64,000 bases of DNA, from assembly GCA_024137785.1 (NCBI GenBank), contig JAHRHZ010000043.1, positions 3,389,275 to 3,453,274 on the forward strand, given 5' to 3'. Numbering within the stretch: the first letter of the stretch is position 1; each line of letters begins with the position of its first letter. Source of the stretch: Ginglymostoma cirratum. Its lineage: Eukaryota. A model generated the notes under the pieces. That model was not told the origin of the DNA. It searched no databases and was given only the letters and a program-made list of their open reading frames with translations. This document shows positions 18,150 through 51,400 of this stretch, one piece after another. Made by a program: the position numbers and the translations under genes.

Positions 18150-18455
18150 GTACACACACACCCACCCACCCCGCCCCCCCCACACACACACCCACCCACC
18201 TACCCACCCCACACGCACCCCCCACCCCACACGCATCCCCCCATACACACACACACGCACCCCCCACCCCACGCGCACACCCCCACACACACACACGCAC
18301 CCCACACCCCACGTGCACCCCCCACACACACGCACTCCCCCACCCCACGCACCCCCCATACACACATGCTCCCCAACACACACGCACCCCCCCACACACC
18401 CACACCCACACCCCCACACACTGAACCACCTCCCCCACAGACACACACTCCCCAT
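18150..18455. repeat. C/A-rich low-complexity (CA)n/(CCCA)n tract
   Basis: Degenerate cacac/cccc repeats. Confidence 0.9.
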
Positions 18456-21720: not shown

Positions 21721-23457
21721 TTTCCCAAAATCTACAAACCTGACCGCCCCAGCAGACCCATTGTCTCTGCCTGCTCCTGCCCTAATGAACTCATCTCCAC
21801 TTACCTTGACTTTGTTTTCTCCCCCTGGTTCAGGAACTCCCCACCTATGTCCAGGACACCACCCAAGCCCTCCACCACCTCCAACACTTCCAATTCCCTG
21901 GCCCCCAATGCCTCATCTTCACAATGGACACCCAGTCCCTATACACTTGCATTCCCCACGTGGATGGCCTAAAAGCCCCCCGCTTCATCCTCTCCCGCAA
22001 GCCCAACCAGCCCCCCTCCACCGACACCCTCATCTGCCTTTAACTGAACTCGTCCTCACCCTCAACAACTTCCCCTTCAACTCCTCCCACTTCCTACAGA
22101 CTAAGGGGGTGGCTATGGGCACCCGCATGGGCCCAAGCTATGCCTGCCCCTTTGTAGGTTACGTGGAACGGTTCCTTTTCTGCTGTTACACTGGTCCTAT
22201 CCCCCACCTCCTATGATGCTGCTTGGCCTGTTGTGTTCATCCAGCTCCACACCTTGTTATCTCATCTATTTCAAGCCGACTGACTCCCACAGCTACCTAG
22301 AATACAGCTCCTCTCACCCACCTTCCTGCAAGAATGCGATCCCCTCCTCCCAATCCCTCCACCTCCGCCGTTTCTGCTCCCAAGATGGGGCATTGCACTC
22401 CCGAACATCCCAGATGTCCTCATATTTCAAGGATTGCAATATCCCCCCTTTGGTGGTCGAAAACGCCCTAGACCGCATCTCTTGCGTTTCCCACACCTCT
22501 GCCCTCACATCCCCTTCCCCCAACAAAAATAAAGGCAGAATCCCCCTTGTCCTAACATATCACCCCACCAACATCCCCATCCAGTGTATCATTCTCCGCC
22601 ACTTGTGCCACCTACAATCCGACCCCACAACCAAAGAGATATTTCCCTCCCCACCCCTCTCTGCCTTCCGTAGGGGCTGCCCTCTCCACGACTGCTTCAT
22701 CTGCTCCATATTCCCCTCTACCCCACCACCCCCGGCACCTTTCCCTGCAACCGCAGGAGGTGCTACACCTGCCCCTACACCTCCTCCCTCACCTCCATCC
22801 AAGGCATCAAACAAACCTTCCACATCTGACATCTTAACCTGCACATCAATCAACTTGGTCTACTGCGTCCGCTGTTCCCGATGTGGCCTCCTCTACATCG
22901 GCGAGACCAAGCGGAGGCTCAGAGACCACTTTGTAGAGCATCTGCGCTCTGTTTGCGACAAATGACAACACCTCCCAGTTCCAAGCCATTTTAACTCCCT
23001 CTCCCACTCCCTGGGTGACATGTCCATCCTGGGCCTCCTCCACAATGGTACCACCCACAAACTGAAGGAGCAGCACCTCATATTCCGCCTCGGGAGCCTA
23101 CAGCCCAATGGCCTAAACGTGGAATTCACCAGTTTTAAAATCTCCCTCCCGCCCCGGCCTCATCCCAAGACCAACCCTCCCTCTCATCCCCACCTCCTTG
23201 ACCTGACACAACCTGTCCATCTTCTCTGCCACCTATCCGCCCCTCCCACCTCACTGACCAATCCCCACCACTGCCTACCTGCACTCACCTATCACCATCC
23301 CACCTACCTTCCCCAGCGCCACCCCTCCTCTCTCTATTTATTTCCCAGCTCCCTTCCCCCTCCCCCATTTCTGAAGAAGAGAATTGACCCAAAACTTCAG
23401 CTTTCCTGCTCCTCTGCTGCTGCCTGACCAGCTGTGTTCCTCCAGCTCCACACTGTT
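21721..23457 (+). mobile_element. Penelope-like retroelement (RT + GIY-YIG), decayed
   Basis: PKIYKPDRPSRPIVS, QTKGVAMGTRMGPSYA, YFKPTDSHSYL, YCVRCSRCGLLYIGETKRRL, EQHLIFRLGSLQPNGLNVEF. Frameshifts and an internal deletion are present. Confidence 0.92.
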
Positions 23458-24067: not shown

Positions 24068-24375
24068 TCATAGAATCCCTACAGTGTGGAAACACGCCTT
24101 TCGGCCCAACAAGCCCATATCGACACTCAGAGCATCCCACCCAGACCCACCCCCTATAACCCACCTAATCTATCTATCTCTGAACACTACGGGCAATTTA
24201 GCATGGCCAATCCACCTAGCCTGCACATCTTTGGACTGTGGGAGGAAACCGGAGCACCTGGAGGAAACCCATGCAGACACAGGGAGAATGTGCAAACTCC
24301 ACACAGACAGTCACCCGAGGGTGGAATTGGACCCGGGTCCCTGGCGCTGTGAGGCAGCAGCGCTAACCACTGCCC
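24068..24375 (-). mobile_element. HE1-type SINE (well preserved)
   Basis: Full V-domain and tail. Confidence 0.88.
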
Positions 24376-24944: not shown

Positions 24945-25660
24945 AGAGATAAAAGGTACTGCAGATGCTGGAGAATCTGAGATAACAAGCATGGGGCTGG
25001 ATGAACACAGCAGGTCAAGCAGCATCATAGGAGCAGGAAAACTTGACGTTTCGGGCCTAAACCCTTCATCAGAAATGGGGGAGGGGAAGAGGGTTCTGAA
25101 ATAGAGAGGGGGAGGCGGATAGAGGATGGATAGAGGAGAGGATAGGTGGAGAGGAAGCAGACAAGTCGAAGGGGCAGGGATGGAGCCAGTAAAGGTGAGT
25201 GTAGGTAGGGGGGTAGGGAGGAGATGGGTCAGTCCAGGGAGGATGGACAGGTCAAGGGGGCGGGATGATGTTAGTAGATAGGAGATGGGGGTGTGGCTTG
25301 GGGTGAGAGGAAAAACAGGTTAGGGAGGTGGAGATGAGCTGGGCTGGTTTTGGGATGCGGTTGGGGGAGGGGAGATTTTGAAGCTTGTGAAATCCACATT
25401 GATGCCACTGGGCTGCAGGGTTCCCAGGCTGAATATGATTTGCTGTTCCTGCAGCCTTCGGGTGGCATCACTGTGGCATTGTAGGAGGCTAAGGATGGAC
25501 ATGTCATCTGAGGAATGGGAAGGGGAGTTGAAATGGTTCGCGACTGGGAGGTGCAGTTGTTTGTTGCGAACTGAGCGCAGGTGTTCTGCAAAGCGGTCCC
25601 CAAGCCTCCGCTTGGTTTCCCCGATGTAGAGGAAGCCACAACGGGTGCAGCGGATGCAGT
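24945..25660 (-). mobile_element. Penelope 3' portion inserted into an HE1 SINE (24733-24945 / 25661-25760)
   Basis: GIY-YIG end (YIGETKRRLGDRFAEHLRSV; EQQIIFSLGTLQPSGINVDF). The SINE resumes after the insertion. Confidence 0.88.
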
Positions 25661-27879: not shown

Positions 27880-28645
27880 GGGTCAGTGTGTTCTGTAGGG
27901 ACCTGTGCGTCTGCAGGGGGCTGTGTTCTGTAGGGGTTTGTGTGTCTGCAGGGAACTGTGTGTCAGTGTGTCTGCAGGGGACAGTGTGTCTGTGTGTTCT
28001 GTAGGAGGCTGTGTGTCAGTGTGTTCTGTAGGGAGGTGTGTGTCTGTGTGTTTGCAGTGGACAGTGTGTCTGTGTGTTCTGTAGGGGGCTGTGTGTCAGT
28101 GTGTTCTGTAGGGAGCTGTGTGTCTGTGTGTTTGCAGGGGACAGTGTGTGCGTGTGTGTGTCTGCAGGGGGCTGTGTGTCAGTGTGTTCTGTCGGGAGCT
28201 GTGTGTCTGTGTGTCTGTCGGGGACTGTGTGTCTGTGTGTTCTGCAGGGGGCTGTGTGTCTGTGTGTTCTGTAGGGAGCTGTGTGTCTGCAGGGGGCTGT
28301 GTGTCTCTGTGTCTGTAGGGGGCTGTGTGTCTGTGTGTTCTGCAGGGGGCTGTGTGTTCTGTAGGGGGCTGTGTGTCTGTGTGTTCTGCAGGGGCCTGTG
28401 TCTTTGTGTGTTCTGTAGGGAGCTGTGTCTCTGTGTGTTCTGTAGGGAGCTGTGTGTCTGTGTGTTCTGCAGGGTACTGTGNNNNNNNNNNGCTGTGTGT
28501 CTGTGTGTTCTGCTGGGGGCTGTGTGCCTGTGTGTTCTGTTGGGTGCTGTGTGTCTGTGTGTTCTGTAGGGGGCTGTGTGCCTGTGTGTTCTGTTGGGTG
28601 CTGTGTGTCTGTGTCTTCTGCTGGGGGCTGTGCGCTATGCGTTCT
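27880..28645. repeat. TG-rich minisatellite, unit ~26 bp (gtgtgttctgtagggggctgtgtgtct), containing a 10-N gap at 28482-28491
   Basis: More than 25 degenerate tandem copies. Confidence 0.92.
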
Positions 28646-29500
28646 GTCGGATTGAACTGGGACCTTCCCTGAGATTCTGCACATTGCTGCCACCTCCAGC
28701 TCACATTGTGTAGGTGCTCCTGCTTTTTCTTGAAGAACAAACGATAATCAAAGTGGATTCGGGGGGAATTCCGAAAGATATTCCCACTGACGATGCTCCT
28801 ATTTCCCGGCAACAGGTTGTCCTGAAGCACCATTTATTTGCTCTGAACAAAGAGGCACGTAAACAGAATGGTGATGGGTTACTGTCCTTAAACCTGCTCA
28901 AATGTCTCGCTGGTCAATATCAACTCTGAGAACAATTATTGGCAGTGACTCAGTGGGTCATAGAGTGATCTCAGTAGAGGTTCTGGAATTCAGTCCATTC
29001 TCAGGTTGGAGTGTATAATCCACACTCTGTAGCCAAAGGAATGGCCTTTCAGATAGAAAAAGAGACTTGCATTTAAAGTGGTTTTCACACCCATAAGTTG
29101 TGTCAAGATATTTTATCAGACAGTGAAAATTTATTTTCAGGTGTCCAGAGATGGTGATCGCCTAATGGTGTTATTATGGGACTAGTAATCCAGAGACCCT
29201 GGGAAATGATGGAACTTGAATTTGATAATTTTTTAATATCTGGAATTAAGATGTCTGTGAGACCCAGGGTAGGGGATTCCAAAACTAGACGGGCATAGGT
29301 TTAAGGTGAGAGGGGAAAGATTTAAAAGGGACCTAAGGGGCAACTTTTTCACACAGAGGGTGATGCGAGTATGGAATGAGCTGCCAGAGGAGGTGGAGGA
29401 GGCTGGTACAATTACAACATTTAAAAGGCATCTGGATGGGTACATGAATAGTCAAGGCTTAGAGGGATATGGTTCAAATGCAGGCAGATGAGACTAGTTA

Positions 29501-39274: not shown

Positions 39275-39471
39275 TCAGCAAGGACTTGACTGTGTGGGGG
39301 CATTCGGTGGGATTTTTGAAGATCTGTTCTCTGACGTCAAAGCGTTCCCTTGAATCAGATCCTTGAAGAGCCGTTTACGAGTTAAATAAAACAAAACTCC
39401 AATCCCCAGAAAACTTGCTAGAGGGACACAGAGACCGAGAATGACAGCTCCCTGGTCAGGCTTCACTGTAA
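39275..39471 (-). CDS. Exon 8, transmembrane helix and cytoplasmic tail, with stop codon
   Basis: Acceptor ttctttctgtttgcag|. Encodes the hydrophobic helix AVILGLCVPLASFLGIGVLFYL, then RKR stop-transfer, and ends ...TQSSPC*. TGA at 39277-39275. Confidence 0.88.
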
Positions 39472-42400
39472 CTGCAAACAGAAAGAATTAATTTACCAAA
39501 CGCCACAGTGTAGCTGCAAAATCACTTCATAACTCACTCGCAAAAGGATCTCTGGAGAGAGGTTATCCACCTGATACATTAACTGTATTTCCCAGTCTAC
39601 AAATGCTGACTGAAAAATTTCCAGTGTGTCTTTCAGATTTCCACCATTTTTCTGGATCCGAAATGCATTAGGAACAATTCAATACGTTATCTCCAGCTAC
39701 ATTAGCAGGCCACACTTTGGAAATATTTTGTTGGCTGTAAACCGTTTTGGGATGTCCTAAGGTTGTGATGGACACTACCAAATGCAAGTTCTCTTTTTCT
39801 GCTTTCTATCTTTTCTCTACATGGTCAGCTCTTGAGGGAACTTTCCAAATTTCTCACTCTGCTCTTTCGTCTCTCTCTGATCCCTATTGACATTGTGATC
39901 CAGTGTATTCAGACAATCCCTATAGTGTAGAAAGAGGCCATTTTGCCCATTGAGACCATACCAACCATCTGAAGAGCAGCCCACCCAGACCCAAACCCCC
40001 ACCCAAACTCTGCATTTCCCATGGCTGATCCACTCAACCAGCATATCCCTGGACACTATGGGGTAATTTCTCACGGCCAATCCACCCTAACCTGCACATG
40101 TTTGGACTGTGGGGGAAAACAAAAAACAGAGCACCTGGAGGAAACCGACACAGACAACATGCAAATTCCACACAGTCGCTAGAGGCTGGAATCAAACCCA
40201 GGTCTCTGGCGCTGAGTCAGCAGTGCTAACTTCTGAGCTACTGCGTCCTATAGTCTTTTACATAAATGGATTGTTTCCCCAAATGTTTAAAACTGTAAAT
40301 GATCCCGCATCCACCGCCCCTGACCACAGTCCACAGACTCAACAATAAACAACATACATGCAAAGGCGACTTGGCCCTTCGAGCCTACTCCCCCATTTAA
40401 TAAGATCATGGCTGATCTGATTTTAACATCAAATCTACATTCCTGCACATTCCTGATAATCAAGGGGTTGTAAAATCCTGCTTTCACATCTGTTGATCTT
40501 AAACGATTTGTTAACCTGAACTTATCTCCTACTCTGTGACCCAGCTGACTTTATTACACACGAGATCTCATCCACCATTCGATTCTTATTGGCTGTCTTG
40601 AAAGAAGCAATTAGAATAAAAAAGTGTACGAAAGACAAGTCTTCAGCCTCGTTTCACCCAGTCTCATTGATCAGCCATGATCATATCGATTTAGATTTTT
40701 ATTATCACTCAAGTACAGAAGTAGAGTGAAAAGTGTTGCCACACACTGTGACATCTTTGGTACAACTACCTAGGTAAAAAAAAACTCAGGTACAAAGTAG
40801 TAAAAGGTGGTAAACAAAAAAGGTTAAATGGGATCTGTTCAGTTATCGGACCCTCCTGGTGCCTCAAATGCATGTAAATGTAGTCTGGCTCAAGTAAGAG
40901 ATGCCTTTGGTTTGTTTGGATAGAGTCAAACACCATGGTTTGTGTAAAAGCCAAAAGAACTGCAGATGCTGTAAATCAGGAACAAAAACAGAAATTGCTG
41001 GAAAAGCTCAGCAGGTCTGGCAGCATCTGTGGAGGAGAAAACAGAGTTAACGTTTCAGGTCCGGTGACTGTTCCTTGAGGACGAAACGTTAACTCTGTTT
41101 TTCTCCTCCACAGATGCTGCCGGACCTGCTGAGCTTTTCCAGCAACTTCTGTTTTGGTTCTATTGCTTGTTTGTTTCCTTGACAATGCTGCCGTGCAGAA
41201 CGGAACGGCGTTTGTGACTATATATGAAAAGTACATTTTTGAAATAAAAAACAAAATTAATAAAATTAAGGTGAAGTAGAAAACTAAAGAAATAAGGGCT
41301 GAATGGTCTACCCCTGTTCCTGTTTTCCCTGTTTCTATGTCTCAGTGGAATAACATTTGAAAGGAAACTGTATAAACATCTGAAAAGATAAATATTTTCA
41401 GGGTTCTGTGGAAAAGCAGAGGTAGTCAGACTAATGGAGTAGCTCTTTTGAAGTAGCCAGAACAGGCAAGATGGGCCAAACAGCCTCATCGTATGCCAAT
41501 TTGCCTCTGTCCAGGCTCTTTCTCAGGACGGTGAGTACTGAGTACTAGCTGTGTACTGTCCTCTCTCTGGGCCCTGCGATGACAAATCCTCTCTCTCTAA
41601 CCTCAGAGTGAACATACTCACATTGGACATTGAGCTGAGCCTCCAGCCTCACTGCTCCCAGTGGATTCTCCACAACGCACTCATAAAGCCCGTGATCGTC
41701 AGGGCTCAGGGAATCGATTCTCAGCTCCGACTTTCCCCGGGAGTTGGAAATATTCCACCTCGGCTGCTCGCTCCCGGTATCTATCCTCCTCCACGTGATG
41801 TTGGCGTCAGGGTTAGCATCTCCCAGGCAGGTTAATGCCAGTGTCTCCCTCTCTCTGACATTGCCCCCTCCCTCGATGAAGACGTTCCGAGGACCATCTG
41901 GTAATCAGAGAACAGACATCAGCTCCTCTGAGGATTGCAGGCCCCATCTCCTCACCTCCCAGCAACTCCCTCCCACCCTCAGCCCTGTGCAATCACTGAC
42001 CCACACAGTCTGTCAGTACAACATCCTTCTGTTCCAAGCCTTCCATGACCTCTTCCCTCATAAAATCATCATAGTCATTGACAGAACCATTCAGGGAGGA
42101 ATTAGTTATCTGGGAAGGAGGATGGACAGGGTAATGGGGAGGTGGTGGGAGAATGGCGTTCACTTGGATATCCAGCATTGACACAATGGGCCAAATGGTG
42201 GCATTCTATACTATCCTGACCCTTTTGCTCCAATCTAATCCCACTTTCCAGTCCGTGGCACTGATGAGTACATGGCTTTGAGTGCAAATACAGCTATGCA
42301 GGTGTGGTGGCTCAGTGTTAGCACTGCTGCCTCACAGTGCCAGAAACCTGGGTTCGATTCCACCCTTGGACGACTGCCTGTATGGAGTTTGTACGTTCTC

Positions 42401-45400
42401 CCCGTGTCTGCATGGGTTTCCTCCAGGTGCTCCGGTTTCCTCCCACAGTCCAAAGACATGCAGGCTAGGTGGATTGGCTATGGGAGTTACAGTACAGGGA
42501 TAGGCGAAGGGAGTGGGTCTGGGTGGGTGGGATGCTATTCAGCAGGTTGGTGTGACTCAATGGGCCGAATGGCCTGCTTCCACACTGTAGGGATTCTATG
42601 ATTTATTAAATACTGATGAGGGATTTTTACATTGAGCACCCTTTCAGGCAGTGAGTTCCTCAGATCTTCATAAAATCTTGGAGCAGAAGTAGGCCATTCA
42701 GCGAGATAATTTCTGATCCGATAGCCCTTAACTCCACTTTTCTGTCTTTTCCCCATATCCCTCGATTTCCTTTTTGATTAAAATCCATTTCTAACTTAGC
42801 CTTGAATATACTTAATGACCCAGCCTCGACAGCCCTCCTAGGTAAAGAATTCCACAGATTTATTACCTGTCAAGAGAAAAAACAGTCAACTCTATCCCTA
42901 ATTGAGCAACTCCTCGCATTTCACCACACCTACCAGGTAGATTATAATTTTGTATACCCCAGATAAATCTCCTGTTCCAAAGGAAACAACCCATCCTTTT
43001 TATAACTGATATACTTGAAGGAATTAACAGTATCGAGACGAAAAAGGTATTAGCTATTTGAGCAGCTTAGAGAATGGATACATGTCCAGGCCCAGATGAT
43101 ATATATATCCCAGGTTGCCATGGGAGGTGAGGGAGGAGATTGCAGGAGCCCTAACATCAATTTTTAATTTCTCTCTGGCCAAAGGTGGTGTACCGCAGGA
43201 CTGGTGAACAGCTAATGTCTGATCACTATTCAAAAGGGATAAACCAGGAAACTACAGGCCAGTGAGTTTGAGGGACAGAATTAACCTTCACTTGGAGAGA
43301 GGCAAGGCTTAGTCTAGGATAGTCTGCCTGGCTTTGTCTGAGGGAGAGTTCATGTCTAATGAATTCAATTGAGTTTTTTTGAGGAGGTGACGAGGTGTGT
43401 AAATGCGGGTAGGGCAGTGACGGAGTCTAGAGCCAGGCTTTTGATATGGTTTTGACACTGCAGGCTGCTTAAGAGGCCACGAGCCTATGGGACCCAGGGC
43501 CATTTGGTTTCAAAACTGGTTTAGCGGCAGTCAAAGGTTCTTTTTGTGACTAGGAACCTGTGCTCAGTGGCACATTGCAGATTTGGAACTGGGTCCTTGG
43601 TGTTTGTAGTGCAAATTCATAAATGTAAGGAGGTGCACAGATGACAGGAAAATTGATGGCATGGTAAACAGTGAAGAGGAAAATCTTATACTACAGGAGG
43701 ATATAGATGGGCTGATCAGAACAGTCGGAAATGGAATTTAATTTTGAAAAGTATGAGGTGATAGAATTTTGGGATGACTAACAAGGCAAGGGATTACACA
43801 ATGAGTGGTAGATCCCCAGGAAGTACAAAGGATCAGGAGAACTTTGCACAGTCACAGATCTTTGAAAGTAGTGGGACACGTAGGTATGGCAGCAGGAGCA
43901 TATGGGGTACTTACCTTTATTTTTATCGAGATGTTGAATAAAAGAGCAGGGATGGTACACCAGAGCTGTTTGAAATGATAGTTATGTCACAGCTGGAGTA
44001 CTGCGTGCGGTTCTGGTCCCCACACTATGGGAAACAGTGTGATAGCACAGGAGGGGGCTGCAGAGGAGATTCACCAGGATGTTGTCTGGGATGGAGTGTT
44101 TCAGCAATGATAAGAGGTTGGATAAGCTGGGGGTGTTTTCTAGAGCAGAGAACACTGAGGAGTGGGACCTGTACAAAGCGAGGAGGGGATTGGTAGGATA
44201 CATCCGAAGAAACCTTTCCCCATTGTAGAGCTGTCAATAACCAGGGGCATGGATTTAAGGAGTGGGATGGGGGGGGGGGGGTGCGGTGTGTTGGTCAGAG
44301 GGGATTTGAGGAGAAGCTTGAAAGGTTGGTAGAGTCAGGAACCATCAATACACTGAAGTATTTAGATGGACATTTCAAACACCATAGAATGCACCTCTTC
44401 TATTTGTGTGTTGATCTTTCTCTGCACCTTCTATGTAGCTGCAACACTATATTCTGCGTTCTGTTCTATTACCCTGATGTACTTAAATGAGATATGGCTT
44501 GTCTGGATCGCACACAAAACAATATTCACTGTATCTCAATATGTGACAATAATGAATCAAATCAAATGAAATCAAGTCAGGCTGAAGAATGGGATTAGAA
44601 TGGATTGGTGCTGGATGACCAGCATAGCACAATGGCTGAATGGCCTACTCCTGTTCCTTATGCTCATTCCATAAGGCCGTTCAGTGTCTTCTTAAAGCCC
44701 GAGGGTATTACAGCATGGAGAAAGGCCATTCAGCCCCTTGGACCTGCTCCACTATTCCATATGATCGTGGCTGATCTGACATTCCTCACATCCACTTTCC
44801 TGCCCTTTCCCTGTAACCCTCGATTCCCCGATTGATTGAGAATGTAACTCAGTCTCAGATATACACAAGGACTCTGTCCCAACAGCTCTGTGGCAAGGAG
44901 TTCCAAAGACTCTCAATCCTCCAAGAGAAGAAATTTGTCCTCATCTCAATCTTAAATTGGTGCCCCTTTATTCTGAGACTGTGCCCTCTGGTCCCAGACT
45001 CTCCCATGAGGGGAAACATCCTGTCAGCATTTTCTGTCTAGCCTCTGAAGAATCCCATATCTTTCAATGGGATCACCTCTCATTCTTCTAAACTCCAGTG
45101 AATAGAGTCCCAACCCGTTCAGCCTTTGCTCAGAAGGAAGGCAGTCCCTCCTCATAAGATAATGAAATAATACGCAGATCCACACCACATTCATTCCACA
45201 GGTGCAGCACGGTAGTTCAGCGGTTAGCGTTGCTGCCTCACAGCACCAGGGACCTTGGTTCGATTCCAGCCTCAGGCAACTGTCTGTGTTGAGTTAATAT
45301 GTTCTCCCTGTGTCTGTGCACCATTCTTCTGGGTGCTGTGGTTTCCTCCCACAGTGCAAAGATGTGAAGCTTGGGTGGAGAGATAGTAGGAACTGCCGAT

Positions 45401-48400
45401 ACCGGAGAATCTGAGATAAAAGGTGTAGAGCTGGATGAACACAGCAGGCCAAGCAGCATCAGAGGAGCAGGAAGGCTGACGTTTCAGGCATAGACCCTTC
45501 TTCAGAAAAGGTCTATGTGTTCATCCAGCTCTACACCTCATTAGCTCAGCTTGGGTGGATTGGCCGTGAGAAATGCAGGGTTACAGGAATGGGGTGGGTC
45601 TGGGCAGACTGCTCTTCAGAGGGTCAGTGTGGACCTGATGGGCTGTATAGCCTTCTTCCACACTGTAAGGATTTCTGTGAAATGCACACCACATCTTCAT
45701 TCATTCTAGATCCACTTCTCACTCAGTTTAGATCGATTCCACAGCGTGATGCTGCTGTCTCAGTCTCCCTAAGGTTCAGCTCGTTCAGCCATTAGCATCT
45801 GCTGAAGAACAGCCCCACCTGGTGTTAGAAACAGGAATTTTTCATGATCCTGGGTTAAGACTGAGTCAGTAACAAGGAACTGTTCCAGGGCCGTGAGGGC
45901 TGGTATCGATAGGGACACAGTTTCAGGAGGGTCAGTAGGGGAATTCGAACAGGAGATGGGGAGACTATTTTTATGCAGCGAATTGGCATGGTCTGGAACA
46001 CACTGCCTGAAGAGAGTCTGGAAGCAGTTTCAATTGTAGTTTTCAAAAGGAATTGAATAAATAATCAAACATTTAAATATACAGGATTTTGAGGAACGAG
46101 CTGAAAGTGTGACACTAACTTGACATCTCTTTCAAAGAGCCAGAACAAACACTATGGGCTAAATGGCCTCCTTCTATAAAAGTCACAAGAAATTGGAACA
46201 GAAGGCCATTCAGCCTCTCGAGCCTGCTCTGCCATTGAGTAGGATCCTGGCTGAGCTGACATTCCTCAAGTCCACTTTCCTGCCCTTTCCTCATAGCCAT
46301 CAATTTCTGACTGATCAGAAATCTATCGATCTCAGCCTCAAATATACACAACGACTCTGTCCCCACAGCTCTCTGTGGCAAGGGATTTCCAAAGACTCAA
46401 CTCTCTGGCAGAAGAACTTCCTCCTCATCTCTGCCATAAATTGATGCCCTTTTATTCTGAGACTATGCTTTTGGATCTCAGACTCAGAGGAGAAACATCC
46501 TCTCGACATTGACCCAGTCAAGCCCCTTAAGAATCCGATGTGTTTTAATGAGATCACCTCTCATTCTTCTCAACTCCTGACAGTCCCAACCTGTTTAGCC
46601 TTTGCTCATAGGAATCCCTCCATACCAGGGACGATCCTAGTGAACACGCTCCAAACTGCCTCCAATGAAATAAAACCTATCCTTGTATAAAGGGCCAAAC
46701 TGGTCACAGTACTCCAGGATTCTGTGCTGATTTGCCTCTGTCCAGTCTCTTTCTCAGGACGGTGAGAGCTCCCTAGCTGTGTACTGTCCTCTCTCTGGGC
46801 CCTGCGAGGATGAAGCCTCTCTCTCTAACCTCAGAGTGAACATACTCACATTGGACATTGAGCTGAGCCTCCAGCCTCACTACTCCCAGTGGATTCTCCA
46901 CAACGCACTCATAAAGCCCGTGATCGTCAGGGCTCAGGGAATCGATTCTCAGCTCCGACTTTCCCCGGGAGTTGGAAACATTCCACCTCGGCTGCTCGCT
47001 CCAGGTCTCTCTCCTCCTCCACGTGACGTTGGCTGCGGGGTTAGCATCTCCCAGGCAGGTTAATGCCAGTGTCTCCCTCTCCCTGGCACTGCCCCCTCCA
47101 TCGATGGAGACGTTCCGAGGACCATCTGGTAATCAGAGAACAGACATCAGCTCCTCTGAAAACTGCAGGCCCTCAGCCGCCCGCCAACCCAAAACCCAAA
47201 CACAAATACCCCTCACCTACCCCCACAACCCTCCACTCATTTCTGTTCTTCATTCCCACATGATTGAATATATCAAAGGGAAAACTTGCATTTATATATC
47301 ACCTTTCAGTGTGTCAGATTTTGCAAAAGCACAAGGTTGAGAGGGTGCAGAAAAGATTTACACGGATGTTGCCAGGGTTGGAGGGTTTCAGCCATATGGA
47401 GAGGCTGACTAGGGGCTATTTTCCCTGGACTATTAGAAGCTGAGGTATGACCTTAATGAAGTTTATAAAATCATGATAGGCATGTCCGGAATTAAGGGTC
47501 TATTGATGGCCACGAATCTATTGTTGATTGTTGGAAAAACCCAACTGGTTCACTAATGTCCTTTAGGGAAGGAAACTGCCATCCTTACCTGGTCTGGCCT
47601 ACATGTGACTCCAGACCCACAGCAATGTGGTTGACTCCCAATCGCCCTCTGGTCAATTAGGGATGGGCAATAAATTCTGCCTGGCCAGCAACGCTCTCAT
47701 CCCATAAATGAATAAAGAATAAAGAACAATCAAGGTCTTTACCATGGGCTGGGGTGGCCAAAACTAGACAGCATAAGTTTAAGGTGAGAGGGGAAAGATT
47801 TAAAAGGGACCCGAGGGGAAATATTTTCACACAGAGGGTGGTGCGTGTATGGAATGAACTGCCAGAGGAAGTGGTGGAGGCTGGTACAATTACAACATTT
47901 AAAAGGCATTTGGATGGGTATGTGAAAAGAAAGGGTTTAGGAGGATACGGGCCAAATGTTGGCAAATGGGACTAGATTAATTTAGGATAAATAACTGGTG
48001 CAGATGGATCGAAGGGTGTGCTTCCATGCTGTGTAATTCTGTGGCTGCATGTGTCGTGACTGTTACAGAAAATTAGCTGTCAAATTATTTGAGACGGGCG
48101 AGTGGGAAAAGCTATTGGACTGCATGGGGCAGTTGATGGTGGGAGAGCTGGTGACGAAATCTGGAGGGCTGCGCATCTGGACCGGAGGGCGTAACCCCCA
48201 CTCCCCCTGCTCTCCAATGGTGGGGGTGTGGAGACCCAGGAGGGGGACACAAAGCACCCCCTCTCCTGAGACTGCACCATGCTGCACGGAGGCCAGGGGC
48301 GGGGGGGTGGTATCTCTCAACCCATCGTGGAGAATGGGAACGGTTGGGAGGATTAGACGGGAGGGGCATCTTCATTTTCATTTCGTGTTAAGGCCACGAC

Positions 48401-51400
48401 CTCCAAACAACAAGCAGCTGGTGCTGCATCTGCACTGGGATGGGGTGGCACCATTTCAGGCTTTTCCAGAGCATTGGCCTGGGCTAATGGGCAGCACCCT
48501 CTCTGTGTGGGGTCAACACGCAGCAGGAGAAATGCACAGCTGCCATGGGCCAGTAAGCAAGAGGAGAGGGGCCTCACTGACTGACTCTGGGGTACATGCA
48601 TTGTAACATTCAGAATAAATGTTTAACACGACGGGGGGGTGGGGAGATTTTGAAGCTAGTAAAGTCCACATTGAGACCATTGGGTTGTAGGCTTCCAAGG
48701 CGGCATATGAGGTGCTGTTCCTCCAGTTTGCAGGTGGTGTCATTGTGACACTGGAGGCGGCCCAGGATGGACATGTCACCCAGGGAGTTGAGGGGCGGGG
48801 GGGGGGGAAGTTAAAGTGGCTCATGACCGGAGGGTGGTTTGTCGCAAACAGAGTGTAGGTGTTCCACAAAGCTGTCTCCGAGCCTCCGCTTGGTCTCCCC
48901 GATGTAGGGGGGGGGGGGGGCTCCCCACCCCCNNNNNNNNNNNNNNNNNNNNNNNNNNNNNNNNNNNNNNNNNNNNNNNNNNNNNNNNNNNNNNNNNNNN
49001 NNNNNNNNNNNNNNNNNNNNNNNNNNNNNNNNGTCTCCGAGCCTCCGCTTGGTCTCCCCGATGTAGGGGGGGGGGGGCTCCCAACCACCTCCCCCCCAAC
49101 CAGCTACCCCCCCCGACCTCATCCCATGTCCAACCCTCCCTCGCTTCCCGCCTCCTTGACCTGACTTAACCTGTCCATCTTCTCTCCCAGCTATCCGCTC
49201 CTCCCATCTCACTGGCCAGTCCCCACCACTCCCTACCTGCACTCACCTATCACCATCCCACCGACCTGCCCCAGCTCCATCTCTCCTCTTTCTATTTATT
49301 TCTGAGCTCTCTTCCCCCTCCCCCATTTCTGAAGAAGGGCCCTGACCCAAAACATCAGCTTTCGTGCTCCTCTGATACTGCCTGGCCTGCTGTGTTCCTG
49401 CAGCTCCACACTGTGTTATCTCTTAGTACATGGGACACACTATACAGGAACTTTCATAATTACGCTGATCTGTTACAGCGCTGCTTTATTGCTGTTTAGT
49501 GTTTGGGGTCAGTTTGAAAAATAATACAGGAAGCCTCACTACAGGGATACGTTCACAACAATGTGGGTGACTCCAAATGAGCATTTGAGGTACATTCTGT
49601 AAAGAGACTCCGTGCTCAATCCCAGACTGTTGCTTTAGTTTCAAGGAAGACAATTTTGCCTCCAGAAAACACCTGGCCCTTTGCTTCAGCGATGGAGCTC
49701 TCAGTTATGTTGTGGCAGCTGCACTGATTTGGCCCCAGCTCTAACCTCAGAGTGAACATACTCACATTGGACATTGAGCTGAGCCTCCAGCCTCACTGCT
49801 CCCAGTGGATTCTCCACAACGCACTCATAAAGCCCGTGATCGTCAGGGCTCAGGGAATCGATTCTCAGCTCCGACTTTCCCCGGGAGTTGGAAACATTCC
49901 ACCTCGGCTGCTCGCTCCCGGTATCTCTCCTCCTCCACGTGATGTTGGCTTCGGGGTTAGCATCTCCCAGGCAGGTTAATGCCAGTGTCTCCCTCTCCCT
50001 CACGTTGCCCCCTCCCTCGATGGAGACATTCCGAGGACCATCTGGTAATCAGAGAACAGACATCAGCTCCTCTGAGGATTGCAGGCCCCATCTCCTCATC
50101 TCCCAGCAACTCCCTCCTGCCCTCAACCCTGACCCACACTGTCTCTTCATCATAAGAGTCTCTACAGTGCAGATAAAGGCCATTCGCACCGACAGATCCC
50201 ACCCCATCCCTGTAAATCCACATTTACTGTAGTTAACCCATTTAACCTGCACACCTATGGGGCAATTTAGCATGGCCAGTCCACCCTAACCTGCACATCT
50301 TTGGACTGTGGGAGGAAACCAGAGGAAACCCACGCAGACACACGGGAGAATGTGCAAACTCCACACAGACAGTCGCCAGAGGGTGGAATTGAACCCGTGT
50401 CCCTGGCGCTGTGAGGCAGCAGTGCTAACCACTGAGCCATCGTGCCCACTGTCTCCGCTTCTCCCCTAACAACCACCCATAAACATGAATCTTCAGTCAC
50501 TGTAAGGTCTAGGAGCTGCCAACCCTCCAGAAATTAAAGAATAATCTTTAAAAGACTGTAAGAGATAGTGTTTATTAATGGAAGTTAGAATTTGTATAGC
50601 ACCTTTCATCACAATGTGAGATTCCAAACCACTTCACAATCATTTAAGTATTTTCGACATGCAGTCACTGCTTCGATGTAGGAAATTACTTTTAAAACTA
50701 TCTCGGGTAGAGTAGTGGGAAGGGCAGTCTGACTGGGTGAGGTAGTAGGTTTTGGGAGATCTGACTATGAAACCTCCAGGGATATTTCAAGTGGAATTGG
50801 TAACTCCAGGGAAGTGCTTGGGAGCAGTCAGTAAATGGGCCTCTTGGTGTTTGTTTCTGCTCTGTGAGCTGCAAAAGGGAACCTCTTGTCCCGGGAATCT
50901 GTGACCGAAATAACTCCAATTCCAGTTCCCCCAGTGTTCTCTCCTCTTCGGGAAAAACCCTGGTCCCCATTGAAAGGCAATAACTGATAGCATATTTGCA
51001 ACATGGCACCTTTTTGAAGAGTGCTAATGGGATCATCATTGAGTGGTGGGGTGGGGGTTGGGGGTTTGCGGGTTCTCATTTCACACTGGAGACTGTTGCT
51101 GCACACAGTAATTGGAGGGAGGGGCTGGGTAGGTTTGCAATACAGTGTGACAGCAACAGCGCGGGTTCAAATTCTCACACTGGCTGAAGTTACTACGAAG
51201 GTTCCTACGTCTCCCCTTGCTTGAGATGAGGTAACCAACACTTAGGTTAAACGACCCACCAGTTGTCTGTCTCTCTCTAATGACAGACTAACACCATGGC
51301 AACTTAGAATTGGTTCACAACAGAAATTTACAAAACTAATTGGAGGAAATAATCGAAGGAGGTCACCTTCCCGGGGTTGTTAGGAAAGAACAGGGCAGTG

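What the first reader, a model, noticed from the sequence alone, without database searches (positions are those of the whole stretch)
41499..50120. Three ~96%-identical Ig exons in otherwise unrelated introns: exon-focused concerted evolution
Seen in sequence: copy A (49766-50041) differs from copy B (46850-47125) at 11/276 nt and from copy C (41622-41897) at 9/276 nt, counted by hand. Homology stops within ~25-120 bp of the exons and is mosaic. B and C share ~120 bp of downstream intron (46730-46849 vs 41499-41621), while A shares only ~25 bp. A and C share ~90 bp of upstream intron, while B shares only ~45 bp. The 2.6-5 kb introns between the copies carry different, often decayed TE insertions. 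Inference: a recent tandem duplication would have copied whole introns, so this is more likely an old duplication homogenised by gene conversion tracts centred on the exon.
Basis: partly seen in the sequence, partly recalled or inferred. Interest (0 to 1): 0.75.

Follow-up and report, generated by a model that had tools for sequence, protein, structure and literature searches.

The report
Shark VCAM1-like gene: homogenised Ig exons
Three neighbouring exons of a shark cell-adhesion gene are almost identical although the DNA between them is unrelated, most likely because DNA repair keeps copying one exon over another; it is a clean new example of a known process.

Summary
Exons A (49766-50041), B (46850-47125) and C (41622-41897) lie on the minus strand. 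They differ at 11, 9 and 14 of 276 nt. Homology ends 27-123 nt into the introns, in a mosaic way, and the 2.6 and 5 kb introns share only scattered old repeats.

The exons are Ig exons 5-7 of an eight-exon VCAM1-like gene (CDS 58887-39275). The assembly gap lies inside intron A-B, at least 733 nt from any exon, and its two edges repeat the same 59 nt.

Nine other shark species carry 2-3 copies of this domain. The copies share species-wide changes, including a one-residue deletion in all three zebra-shark copies. They never group by position: 5 of 5 positional clades were rejected. Synonymous divergence between the window's copies is only 0.04-0.08, while a SINE in intron B-C is 19% from its family majority.

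Two limits apply. The window's own three copies do not form one clade.

This is a known mechanism in a new case. The scan noted conversion patches elsewhere in this genome (s1-879101, s1-879860); I did not check them.

The parts
49766..50041 (-). Ig exon A (copy 1 of the homogenised exon), 276 nt, phase 1-1
   Evidence: One search gives coordinates, splice context and translation. Pfam I-set, E 4.6e-14.
46850..47125 (-). Ig exon B (copy 2), 276 nt, phase 1-1. It is the most divergent copy, with 8 of the 17 variable sites unique to it
   Evidence: I-set, E 7.3e-13.
41622..41897 (-). Ig exon C (copy 3), 276 nt, phase 1-1
   Evidence: I-set, E 2.1e-13.
50042..50131 (-). Upstream intron flank of A that is still homologous to the flank of C (41898-41987). 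With an 11-nt indel the match runs about 20 nt further
   Evidence: 102 of 108 aligned letters alike.
47126..47172 (-). Upstream intron flank of B shared with A and C (44 of 47 nt). Homology ends here
46730..46849 (-). Downstream intron flank of B homologous to that of C (41499-41621). A shares only the first 27 nt (49739-49765)
   Evidence: 111 of 120 letters alike, 3-nt indel.
41499..41621 (-). Downstream intron flank of C homologous to that of B
47173..49738 (-). Non-homologous body of intron A-B. 51% of its bases have a second, diverged copy elsewhere in the window. It contains the assembly gap
48933..49032 (.). Assembly gap (100 N) inside intron A-B. Its edges, 48874-48932 and 49033-49089, repeat the same 59 nt
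41988..46729 (-). Non-homologous body of intron B-C. 46% of its bases have a diverged second copy in the window. It holds an old SINE copy at 45207-45379, 19.2% from the family majority
51482..51763 (-). Single-copy D-type Ig exon, 282 nt, phase 1-1, 38% identical in protein to A. It is not part of the homogenised set
52937..53254 (-). Ig exon D2 of the gene, 318 nt, phase 1-1
56122..56400 (-). Ig exon D1 (head domain), 279 nt. It aligns to human VCAM-1 domain 1, including the IDS motif and four cysteines
   Evidence: 1vca/1vsc/1ij9, E 1.6e-6..
58830..58887 (-). Coding part of the signal-peptide exon, with ATG at 58887-58885
39275..39471 (-). Last coding exon: membrane-spanning stretch, short tail and stop codon TGA at 39277-39275
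   Evidence: 95% identical to the whale-shark protein's C-terminus..

Best explanation
Exons A, B and C are three tandem copies of one Ig-domain exon in the stalk of a shark VCAM1-like adhesion gene. The exon duplication is old: at least two copies existed in the common ancestor of the sampled sharks (inferred).

Since then the copies have repeatedly been made alike by short non-crossover gene conversion between them. A break in one copy is repaired from another copy on the same chromosome or on the sister chromatid. This pastes over a few hundred bases without moving the introns.

Pairing needs homology. Selection slows divergence only in the exon. So the exon plus 27-123 nt of flank survives as an island of homology, while the introns drift and fill with repeats. 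Tracts therefore end at or inside the island's edges.

Different events had different partners and ends, which gives the mosaic seen here. The 3' half of the exon is converted most often or most recently. The 5' half partly escapes.

Shown: the near-identity, the sharp mosaic edges, the unrelated introns, the low synonymous divergence, and the species-wide shared changes in other sharks. Inferred: the age of the duplication and the repair mechanism itself.
For: Identity and extent:
- Exon identity is 94.9-96.7%, and the homology blocks are only 350-446 nt long.
- There is no collinear intron homology.
- In 6 of 6 boundary regions no recognisable dispersed repeat lies within about 45 nt of the block edge. 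The edges are therefore not simply insertion breakpoints.

Selection does not explain the identity:
- dS is 0.039-0.080 and dN/dS is 0.24-1.48.

Mosaic pattern:
- The upstream flank pairs A with C. The downstream flank pairs B with C.
- Codons 12, 13 and 39 pair A with C, and codon 49 pairs A with B, when polarised by the other sharks' residues.
- 16 of 17 variable sites lie in the first 147 of 276 nt (binomial 3.6e-4).

Age of the introns:
- The SINE copy inside intron B-C (45207-45379) is 19.2% from a 12-copy majority. The exon copies are only about 1.6-2.5% per lineage apart.
- Two about 410-nt repeats within that intron are only 76% alike.

Base composition:
- GC3 of A/B/C is 0.66-0.67, against 0.35-0.58 in the other five coding exons. 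The in-block intron flanks have GC 0.50-0.59, against 0.42-0.52 in the intron bodies. This fits GC-biased conversion, as described in PMC2720389 and 10.1101/135152 (passages read).

Tract scale:
- Non-allelic conversion in humans has a mean tract of 250 bp, CI 63-1000 (10.1101/135152, passages read).

Cross-species evidence:
- All 10 species have 2-3 copies.
- The copies of 6 of 10 species form their own clade, and no positional grouping appears.
- Columns fixed within but different between species, against positional columns, are 3:0, 10:0, 1:1, 2:0, 4:0, 11:0, 18:0 and 11:0 in 8 species pairs.
- 5 of 5 positional clades are rejected, AU p from 0.018 to 2.8e-5.
- All three zebra-shark copies share a one-residue deletion and two substitutions. 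All three whale-shark copies share V to I.
- The two congeneric Chiloscyllium species differ at 3 columns in both copies at once.
- In Heptranchias the first 17 residues of the two copies are very different while the rest is nearly identical. This is what a partial tract would leave.
Against: - The window's own three copies are not one clade. Only 2% of bootstrap trees join them. A and C pair at 94/87, and B is as close to whale-shark copy 1 (91%) as to A. Homogenisation in this lineage is therefore incomplete, or not much younger than the split from the nearest relatives.
- One column (A/V at codon 13) follows position between the window and the whale shark.
- All cross-species evidence is protein only and comes from automatic gene models. 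Copy numbers may depend on the isoform chosen.
- The age of the intron repeats rests on 12 copies from 64 kb. The majority sequence was seeded with the youngest copy, and mixed subfamilies would inflate the 19%.
- The GC3 difference could have other causes.
- The AU groups were typed after the tree had been seen.
- No read evidence, no RNA evidence, and no nucleotide sequence from any other species was available.
Confidence: 0.8

Rival explanations
1. Repeated recent duplication without conversion. In each shark lineage the exon was duplicated anew. Either a short unit of about 0.5 kb was copied and its short introns were later inflated by repeats, or there were cycles of unequal crossing-over (birth and death).
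For: - In intron B-C, the 123-nt flank after B and the roughly 115-nt flank before C are what a 0.5-kb tandem unit with later insertions between would leave.
- 46-51% of the two introns is recognisable dispersed repeat, even with only 64 kb to compare against.
- The SINE 200 nt upstream of exon A is young, 2.2% from the majority.
- Copy number differs among species, 2 or 3.
Against: - It needs at least 13 independent duplications of exactly this exon in 10 species, yet no species is left with one copy.
- Intron A-B lacks the expected flanks: only 27 nt remain after A and 47 nt before B. They are not found displaced anywhere in the intron.
- The SINE in intron B-C is 19.2% diverged, and the two 410-nt repeats there are 76% alike. 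Both are far older than the copies' 4-8% synonymous divergence.
- Unequal crossing-over would duplicate the intron between the copies. No intron homology exists.
- The Heptranchias copies, with a very divergent start and a near-identical remainder, do not fit a young whole-exon duplicate.
Confidence: 0.12
2. The copies are old duplicates kept alike by purifying selection alone, with no sequence exchange.
For: The 3' half of the domain is the most conserved part between species as well.
Against: - Synonymous divergence is only 0.039-0.080 and dN/dS is 0.24-1.48. An old duplicate under selection would show saturated dS and low dN/dS.
- Intron flanks are 92.5-95.6% identical.
- Species-wide shared substitutions, and an indel present in all copies of one species, cannot arise from constraint.
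Confidence: 0.02
3. Assembly artefact: one or two real exons were multiplied by mis-assembly or by haplotype duplication.
For: - An assembly gap with duplicated edges lies in intron A-B.
- No read-level check could be made.
Against: - The copies differ at 9-14 sites and sit in unrelated introns. A false duplication would carry kilobases of near-identical flank.
- Independent assemblies of whale shark, zebra shark and Mustelus also yield proteins with three copies.
Confidence: 0.03

Closest known systems
Concerted evolution of duplicated genes by non-allelic gene conversion, for example the mammalian pairs BMP8A/B, DDX19A/B and TUBG1/2 (PMC2720389, passages read), with human tract parameters from 10.1101/135152 (passages read)
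   Same: - Paralogues share lineage-specific changes.
- Regions of high identity are sharply bounded.
- GC is raised in the converted part.
- Tracts are a few hundred bases long.
- Phylogenies mimic many independent duplications.
   Different: - Here the partners are tandem exons inside one gene, not two genes.
- The islands are only 350-446 nt and contain a single exon. Those mammalian pairs were selected for having at least two exons and the intron between them homogenised.
- The pattern is seen in every shark order sampled.
[quoted passage not shown]
   Same: [quoted passage not shown] That paper attributes this to recombination between units.
   Different: - That survey calls the phenomenon the exception, not the norm, and mostly lineage-specific.
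- It links the phenomenon to high gain and loss of units.
- Here the copy number is nearly stable (2-3) and the pattern is present in all 10 species.
- The survey worked on cDNA, so the state of the introns was not part of it.
Concerted evolution in the CEA/CEACAM Ig gene family (PMC7042247; search listing and start of abstract only)
   Same: Ig-domain exons of immune adhesion molecules are homogenised by gene conversion.
   Different: That case concerns separate genes of a family, not tandem exons within one gene. I did not read the details.
Mammalian VCAM-1 (PDB 1vca, 1vsc, 1ij9)
   Same: - The head domain aligns at E 1.6e-6, with the IDS motif and four cysteines in register.
- It is a type I membrane protein made of Ig domains, one per phase-1 exon.
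- NCBI names several shark orthologues 'vascular cell adhesion protein 1-like'.
   Different: - There is one head (D1-D2) followed by four stalk Ig domains, three of them near-identical.
- Human VCAM-1, from my own recall and not from any call, has seven domains with D1-D3 repeated as D4-D6.
- Orthology was not tested by synteny.

Membership tests
Concerted evolution by gene conversion | Paralogous copies share lineage-specific changes, so that they are closer within a species than to their positional counterparts in other species | tested here: met
   - Columns fixed within a species against positional columns total 60:1 over 8 species pairs.
- 6 of 10 species have monophyletic copies and none shows positional grouping.
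- 5 of 5 positional clades are rejected.
- For the window's own trio the tree is unresolved; only A and C pair.
Concerted evolution by gene conversion | The duplication predates the species splits, shown by flanks or introns that are orthologous by position | not testable with these tools
The only hints are indirect: 2-3 copies in all 10 species, and one positional column shared with whale shark.
Concerted evolution by gene conversion | Sharply bounded, mosaic tracts of high identity within otherwise diverged sequence | tested here: met
   - Blocks of 350-446 nt at 93.5-96.7% identity.
- Nothing alignable beyond them.
- Different pairings in different segments.
Concerted evolution by gene conversion | Low synonymous and intronic divergence inside the tract, so that selection alone is not the cause | tested here: met
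   dS is 0.039-0.080. In-block intron flanks are 92.5-95.6% identical.
Concerted evolution by gene conversion | Raised GC content in the converted region (GC-biased conversion) | tested here: met
   GC3 is 0.66-0.67, against 0.35-0.58 in the other five coding exons of the same gene. The flanks are also richer in GC than the intron bodies. This is weak support, as other causes are possible.
Concerted evolution by gene conversion | Formal recombination test (GENECONV or PHI) on nucleotide alignments of several species | not tested
   Only three nucleotide sequences, all from the window, were available. I tested only the clustering of variable sites (16 of 17 in the first 147 nt, p 3.6e-4).
VCAM-1 / MAdCAM-1 family of integrin ligands | N-terminal Ig domain with an acidic integrin-binding motif in the C-D loop and an extra disulfide | tested here: met
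   One search aligns the window's D1 to human VCAM-1 residues 15-89 at E 1.6e-6. IDS lies over IDS and four cysteines are in register. MAdCAM-1 matches only at E 0.65-0.71. That this motif binds integrin is my recall, not a call result.
VCAM-1 / MAdCAM-1 family of integrin ligands | Type I membrane protein with Ig ectodomain, one membrane span and a short tail | tested here: inconclusive
   The exon order is signal exon, six Ig exons, then a last exon with a hydrophobic stretch and a tail of about 40 residues. This comes from alignment to orthologues. No signal-peptide or membrane-span predictor was run.
VCAM-1 / MAdCAM-1 family of integrin ligands | Orthology to tetrapod VCAM1 (synteny, reciprocal best hits) and binding of alpha4 integrins | not tested
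   No synteny data and no experiment were available. The names 'vascular cell adhesion protein 1-like' come from NCBI's automatic annotation. The same gene is also named hemicentin-2-like, contactin-like and myelin-associated glycoprotein-like in other sharks.

The most novel reading that the evidence does not exclude
The homogenisation is not a passing state. It is a condition kept up in every sampled shark order since their common ancestor, hundreds of millions of years by my recall of shark divergence times.

The proposal has three parts:
- There is a conversion core in the 3' half of the exon.
- The 5' part repeatedly escapes and changes at dN/dS near 1.
- Selection favours it because the stalk is built from interchangeable phase-1 cassette exons, whose inclusion tunes how far the integrin-binding head stands from the membrane. 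Annotated isoforms of other sharks drop single Ig exons.

That would make this gene one of the longest-lived exon-scale conversion islands known, and a natural system for measuring how small a homology island can sustain conversion.
Probability: 0.3. Interest if true: 0.55.

Novelty: new member of a known kind. Interest (0 to 1): 0.4.

Why it matters
- **A clean natural example.** It shows how small an island of homology (350-446 nt, one exon plus splice flanks) can keep gene conversion going while kilobases of intron around it turn over completely.
- **A trap for domain phylogenies.** A tree of these domains would wrongly infer a dozen or more independent duplications.
- **A trap for annotation.** Automatic pipelines give the same gene at least five different names in different sharks.
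- **A trap for assembly.** Short reads cannot place 96%-identical exons.
- **Shark immunology.** It defines the exon structure of a VCAM1-like gene. A protein annotated as VCAM1 in nurse-shark plasma rose after immunisation (PMC9207270, passages read).
- **No new mechanism.** The process itself is already known.

Tried and rejected
I asked look-up of encoding contigs for the zebra-shark and whale-shark loci. I fell back on proteins only.

**Read evidence.** The look-up of sequencing runs listed 24 coded runs. The best share of words was 0.17 and none was on record as RNA. So there is no read support for the assembly, for splicing or for relatives.

**Residual old homology outside the blocks.** I looked for this as a footprint of tract edges. 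In 6 comparisons the best was A-B upstream, with z 2.1 and 13 of 300 shuffles as good. It is not convincing and I do not use it.

**Block edges as repeat insertion points.** I checked whether the edges coincide with insertions. In 6 of 6 boundary regions no repeat starts within about 45 nt of the edge. Two regions have no second copy in the window at all.

**More distant relatives (rays, chimaeras).** A profile of six orthologues returned the same 13 shark proteins. After them came only CD22-like and hemicentin-like proteins at 23-24% identity. Only 8000 candidates were scored, so this is no proof of absence.

**PDB search with the repeated domain.** It gives only generic I-set matches: contactin-2, MDGA1, DSCAM, titin. 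The domain by itself does not name the gene. The head domain does.

**Pfam on two intron ORFs** (289 aa at 53565-54431; 39 aa beside the gap). No hit. My impression that they belong to retroelements is therefore unsupported.

**Literature.** Four searches found no paper on the exon structure or concerted evolution of a shark VCAM1-like gene. The library lacks most subscription journals. Supplements were closed and not consulted. They may hold the nurse-shark VCAM1 contig (PMC9207270) or gene-family tables of the whale-shark and zebra-shark genome papers.

- I did not fill or look up the N gaps.

Full report
**What is there.** Three 276-nt segments on the minus strand are A 49766-50041, B 46850-47125 and C 41622-41897. 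They differ at 11 (A-B), 9 (A-C) and 14 (B-C) positions.
- Each is bounded by the same acceptor context (20 identical nt ending in AG) and the same donor (GTGAGTATGT).
- Each is open in one frame, starts and ends in phase 1, and encodes a 91-residue Ig domain. Pfam I-set scores are E 4.6e-14, 7.3e-13 and 2.1e-13.
- A sensitive self-comparison of 36-54 kb gave 32 matches. Three are the blocks around the exons: C-B 446 columns at 93.5%, C-A 393 at 96.7%, B-A 350 at 96.0%. The other 29 are dispersed repeat pieces at 67-93%, often inverted and never collinear with the units.

**Edges of the homology.** I walked outwards from the exons.
- Downstream, all three copies are identical for 27 nt. Only B and C continue, with 111 of 120 letters alike and one 3-nt indel.
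- Upstream, A and C continue for about 90 nt ungapped, or 102 of 108 letters alike if an 11-nt indel is allowed. B shares 47 nt (44 of 47).
- In the next 150 nt beyond each edge, the best local alignment was no better than shuffles. The best of 6 comparisons had z 2.1, reached by 13 of 300 shuffles.
- In none of the 6 boundary regions does a recognisable dispersed repeat lie within about 45 nt of the edge.

**The assembly gap.** The 100 N at 48933-49032 lie in intron A-B, 733 nt from exon A and 1807 nt from exon B. No exon or frame crosses them.
- The 59 nt before the gap and the 59 nt after it are the same sequence (93%). They differ mainly in the length of a G run.
- This is what two overlapping, unmerged contig ends look like.
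- It cannot be excluded that something is hidden there. I did not try to fill it.
- The finding does not depend on the gap. The B-C pair, and all exon-flank junctions, lie in continuous sequence.

**The gene.** tblastn with one copy found a fourth, 38%-identical Ig exon just upstream.
- A search of 1.84 billion representatives with exon A alone returned four short proteins at 46-79% identity. NCBI names most of them 'vascular cell adhesion protein 1-like', from Chiloscyllium, Cetorhinus and Heptranchias.
- Mapping the zebra-shark and whale-shark proteins back on the window, and reading the splice sites, gives eight coding exons on the minus strand:
  - signal exon, 58887-58830
  - D1, 56400-56122
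  - D2, 53254-52937
  - a single-copy D-type Ig exon, 51763-51482
  - A, B and C
  - a last exon with the membrane span, tail and stop, 39471-39275
- All six Ig exons are phase 1-1.
- D1 alone matches human VCAM-1 domain 1 best among solved structures (E 1.6e-6). IDS aligns over IDS and four cysteines are in register. MAdCAM-1 scores E 0.65-0.71.
- This agrees with an earlier first-stage note on the same stretch (s1-879749).
- I searched exon by exon and did not build the joined model.

**Is the likeness due to selection?** No.
- Nei-Gojobori counts give dS 0.047, 0.080 and 0.039, and dN/dS 0.85, 0.24 and 1.48, for A-B, A-C and B-C.
- The copies are therefore young at silent sites as well, and the differences are not filtered by strong constraint.
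- The intron flanks inside the blocks are 92.5-95.6% identical.

**Is the duplication itself young?** The introns say no.
- Introns A-B (2640 nt with the gap) and B-C (4952 nt) share nothing collinear.
- 51% and 46% of their bodies have a second copy somewhere in the 64 kb, at median identity 80% and 77%.
- Intron B-C holds two about 410-nt repeats that are only 76% alike.
- It also holds a SINE copy (45207-45379) that is 19.2% from the majority of 12 copies in the window. The exon copies are about 1.6-2.5% per lineage apart.
- That SINE is absent from the other units, so it entered after the units had separated. It looks several times older than the exons' common ancestor.
- Caveats: there were only 12 copies, the set was seeded with the youngest copy, and mixed subfamilies are possible. 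Another copy of the same family 200 nt upstream of exon A is young (2.2%), so not all intron content is old.

**Mosaic pattern.**
- Of 17 variable exon sites, 3 are unique to A, 8 to B and 6 to C. Sixteen lie in the first 147 nt (binomial 3.6e-4).
- The last 129 nt of the exon plus 27 nt of intron carry one difference among the three copies.
- I polarised the changes by the residues of the other sharks. A and C share derived states at codons 12, 13 and 39. A and B share one at codon 49. The upstream flank joins A with C, and the downstream flank joins B with C.
- No single tree fits all segments. Several conversion events with different partners and ends would leave this pattern.
- GC3 is 0.66-0.67 in A/B/C against 0.35-0.58 in the other five coding exons. 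The in-block flanks are richer in GC than the intron bodies. This agrees with GC-biased conversion (PMC2720389 and 10.1101/135152, passages read), but it is weak evidence on its own.

**Other sharks (proteins only).** Two searches gave 13 orthologous proteins from nine species (sequences).
- Three copies of the A-type domain occur in whale shark, zebra shark and Mustelus.
- Two copies occur in Chiloscyllium plagiosum, C. punctatum, Carcharodon, Cetorhinus, Heterodontus and Heptranchias.
- With the window, that makes 10 of 10 species with at least two copies.
- In a maximum-likelihood tree of 24 domains, the copies of 6 of 10 species form their own clade: Heterodontus 100/98, Carcharodon 99/97, Heptranchias 99/98, Cetorhinus 97/88, Mustelus 94/87 and C. 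punctatum 67/93. The other four lie in unresolved forks, and no positional grouping appears.
- In eight species pairs, columns fixed within each species but different between them number 3, 10, 1, 2, 4, 11, 18 and 11. Columns that follow position number 0, 0, 1, 0, 0, 0, 0 and 0.
- All three zebra-shark copies share a one-residue deletion, Q for L and T for N. All three whale-shark copies share I for V. The two Chiloscyllium species differ at three columns in both copies at once.
- AU tests reject all five positional clades tried: p 0.0086, 2.8e-5, 0.018, 0.0058 and 0.012.

**Results against a simple story.**
- The window's own three copies do not form a clade; only 2% of bootstrap trees join them. 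A and C pair, while B is as near to whale-shark copy 1 (91%) as to A.
- At protein level, B and C differ at 11 of 91 residues. That is more than the 6-10 differences between window copies and whale-shark copies.
- One column (V/A/V at codon 13) follows position in the window and in whale shark. This hints that the three copies already existed in their common ancestor and that copy 2 escaped one event.
- So homogenisation in this lineage is patchy and not very recent.
- This does not rescue the rival readings. A triplication as young as the copies' 4-8% silent divergence should have left introns about 95% alike.

**A regularity across species.**
- Differences between copies of one species fall mostly in the N-terminal half: 50 species-by-column cases in the first 50 columns against 13 in the next 41.
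- This is more than the between-species pattern predicts (56 against 36; Fisher p 0.022).
- Heptranchias contributes 16 of the 50. Its two copies are very different over the first 17 residues and nearly identical after that.
- Either tracts usually cover the 3' part of the exon, or the 5' part is under diversifying pressure. I cannot separate the two.

**Mechanism proposed.**
- The process is short non-crossover gene conversion between tandem exons, probably by synthesis-dependent strand annealing after a break (inferred).
- Block sizes of 350-446 nt fit the few-hundred-base tracts reported for non-allelic conversion. The human mean is 250 bp, CI 63-1000, and the rate falls as the copies diverge (10.1101/135152, passages read).
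- The intron flanks and splice sites are included in the blocks. So the template is DNA, not spliced RNA or cDNA.
- The exon focus follows from constraint. Only the exon keeps enough identity for pairing, so the island cannot grow and erodes from its edges.

**Comparison with what is known.**
- Concerted evolution by conversion is textbook knowledge. Long-lasting cases between gene pairs are described in PMC2720389.
- For domain repeats inside proteins, a metazoan survey calls it rare and lineage-specific (PMC5100051, passages read).
- The present case differs in three ways. It is seen in every shark order sampled. Copy number is nearly constant. The introns are wholly unrelated.
- Four literature searches found nothing on this gene's structure or on homogenised exons in it.
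- One paper reports that a VCAM1-annotated protein rose in nurse-shark plasma after immunisation (PMC9207270, passages read). Another merely places the origin of VCAM1 at cartilaginous fish (PMC7916592, passages read).
- I rate it a new member of a known kind.

**What could not be done.**
The stretch named there was left out of all later searches and masked in scripts.
- No RNA evidence was available. No supplements were seen.
- The species of the window is not known to me. Its proteins are nearest to whale shark (91-93% in the repeated domain, 95% in the last exon) and zebra shark.
- The scan's notes list other conversion patches in this genome (s1-879101, s1-879860). I did not check them.

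Noticed in passing
window 48874-48932 and 49033-49089: The two edges of the 100-N gap carry the same 59 nt (93%), differing mainly in a G-run length. They look like overlapping contig ends that were not merged. Similar 37-41-nt pieces occur at 22887-22926 and 25596-25632, so the gap sits in a dispersed repeat.
   Followed up: partly
window 39275-58887, minus strand; proteins P0155, P0057, P0157, P0025, P0161, P0156, P0160: All six Ig exons of the gene are phase 1-1. The annotated isoforms of Heptranchias, Cetorhinus and Carcharodon differ by the presence or absence of single Ig domains. The exons may therefore act as cassettes that change stalk length. No RNA data were seen.
   Followed up: no
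protein P0155 (Heptranchias perlo), residues about 217-410: In this species the other stalk domain (the D-type, single-copy in the window at 51482-51763) is present twice and nearly identical. The same kind of duplication or homogenisation therefore affects a different exon there.
   Followed up: no
proteins: Automatic annotation names the same shark gene vascular cell adhesion protein 1-like, hemicentin-2-like, contactin-2/5/6-like or myelin-associated glycoprotein-like, depending on species and isoform.
   Followed up: no
window 50246-50445: A SINE copy 200 nt upstream of exon A is only 2.2% from the majority of 12 copies in the window. Another at 24191-24372 is 2.9%. The other ten are 6.6-19.2%. 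The family seems to have been active over a long time, including recently.
   Followed up: partly
window 27939-28647: A minisatellite (27-nt unit, about 25 copies; also read as an 80-nt unit) surrounds the second assembly gap of the window, the 10 N at 28482-28491.
   Followed up: no
window 18160-18453: A C-rich, imperfect 18/40-nt tandem array lies in the stretch with strongly negative GC skew (18-24 kb).
   Followed up: no
window 40980-41160: A 181-nt stretch in the intron between exon C and the last exon matches its own reverse complement at 87%, which makes it a long palindrome or hairpin.
   Followed up: no
window 53565-54434 (+) and 47754-47975 (+): A 289-aa ORF lies in the D1-D2 intron. 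By eye its C-terminal part resembles a 73-aa ORF in intron A-B. Neither the 289-aa ORF nor the 39-aa ORF piece beside the gap has a Pfam match. They are probably parts of an undescribed or decayed retroelement.
   Followed up: partly
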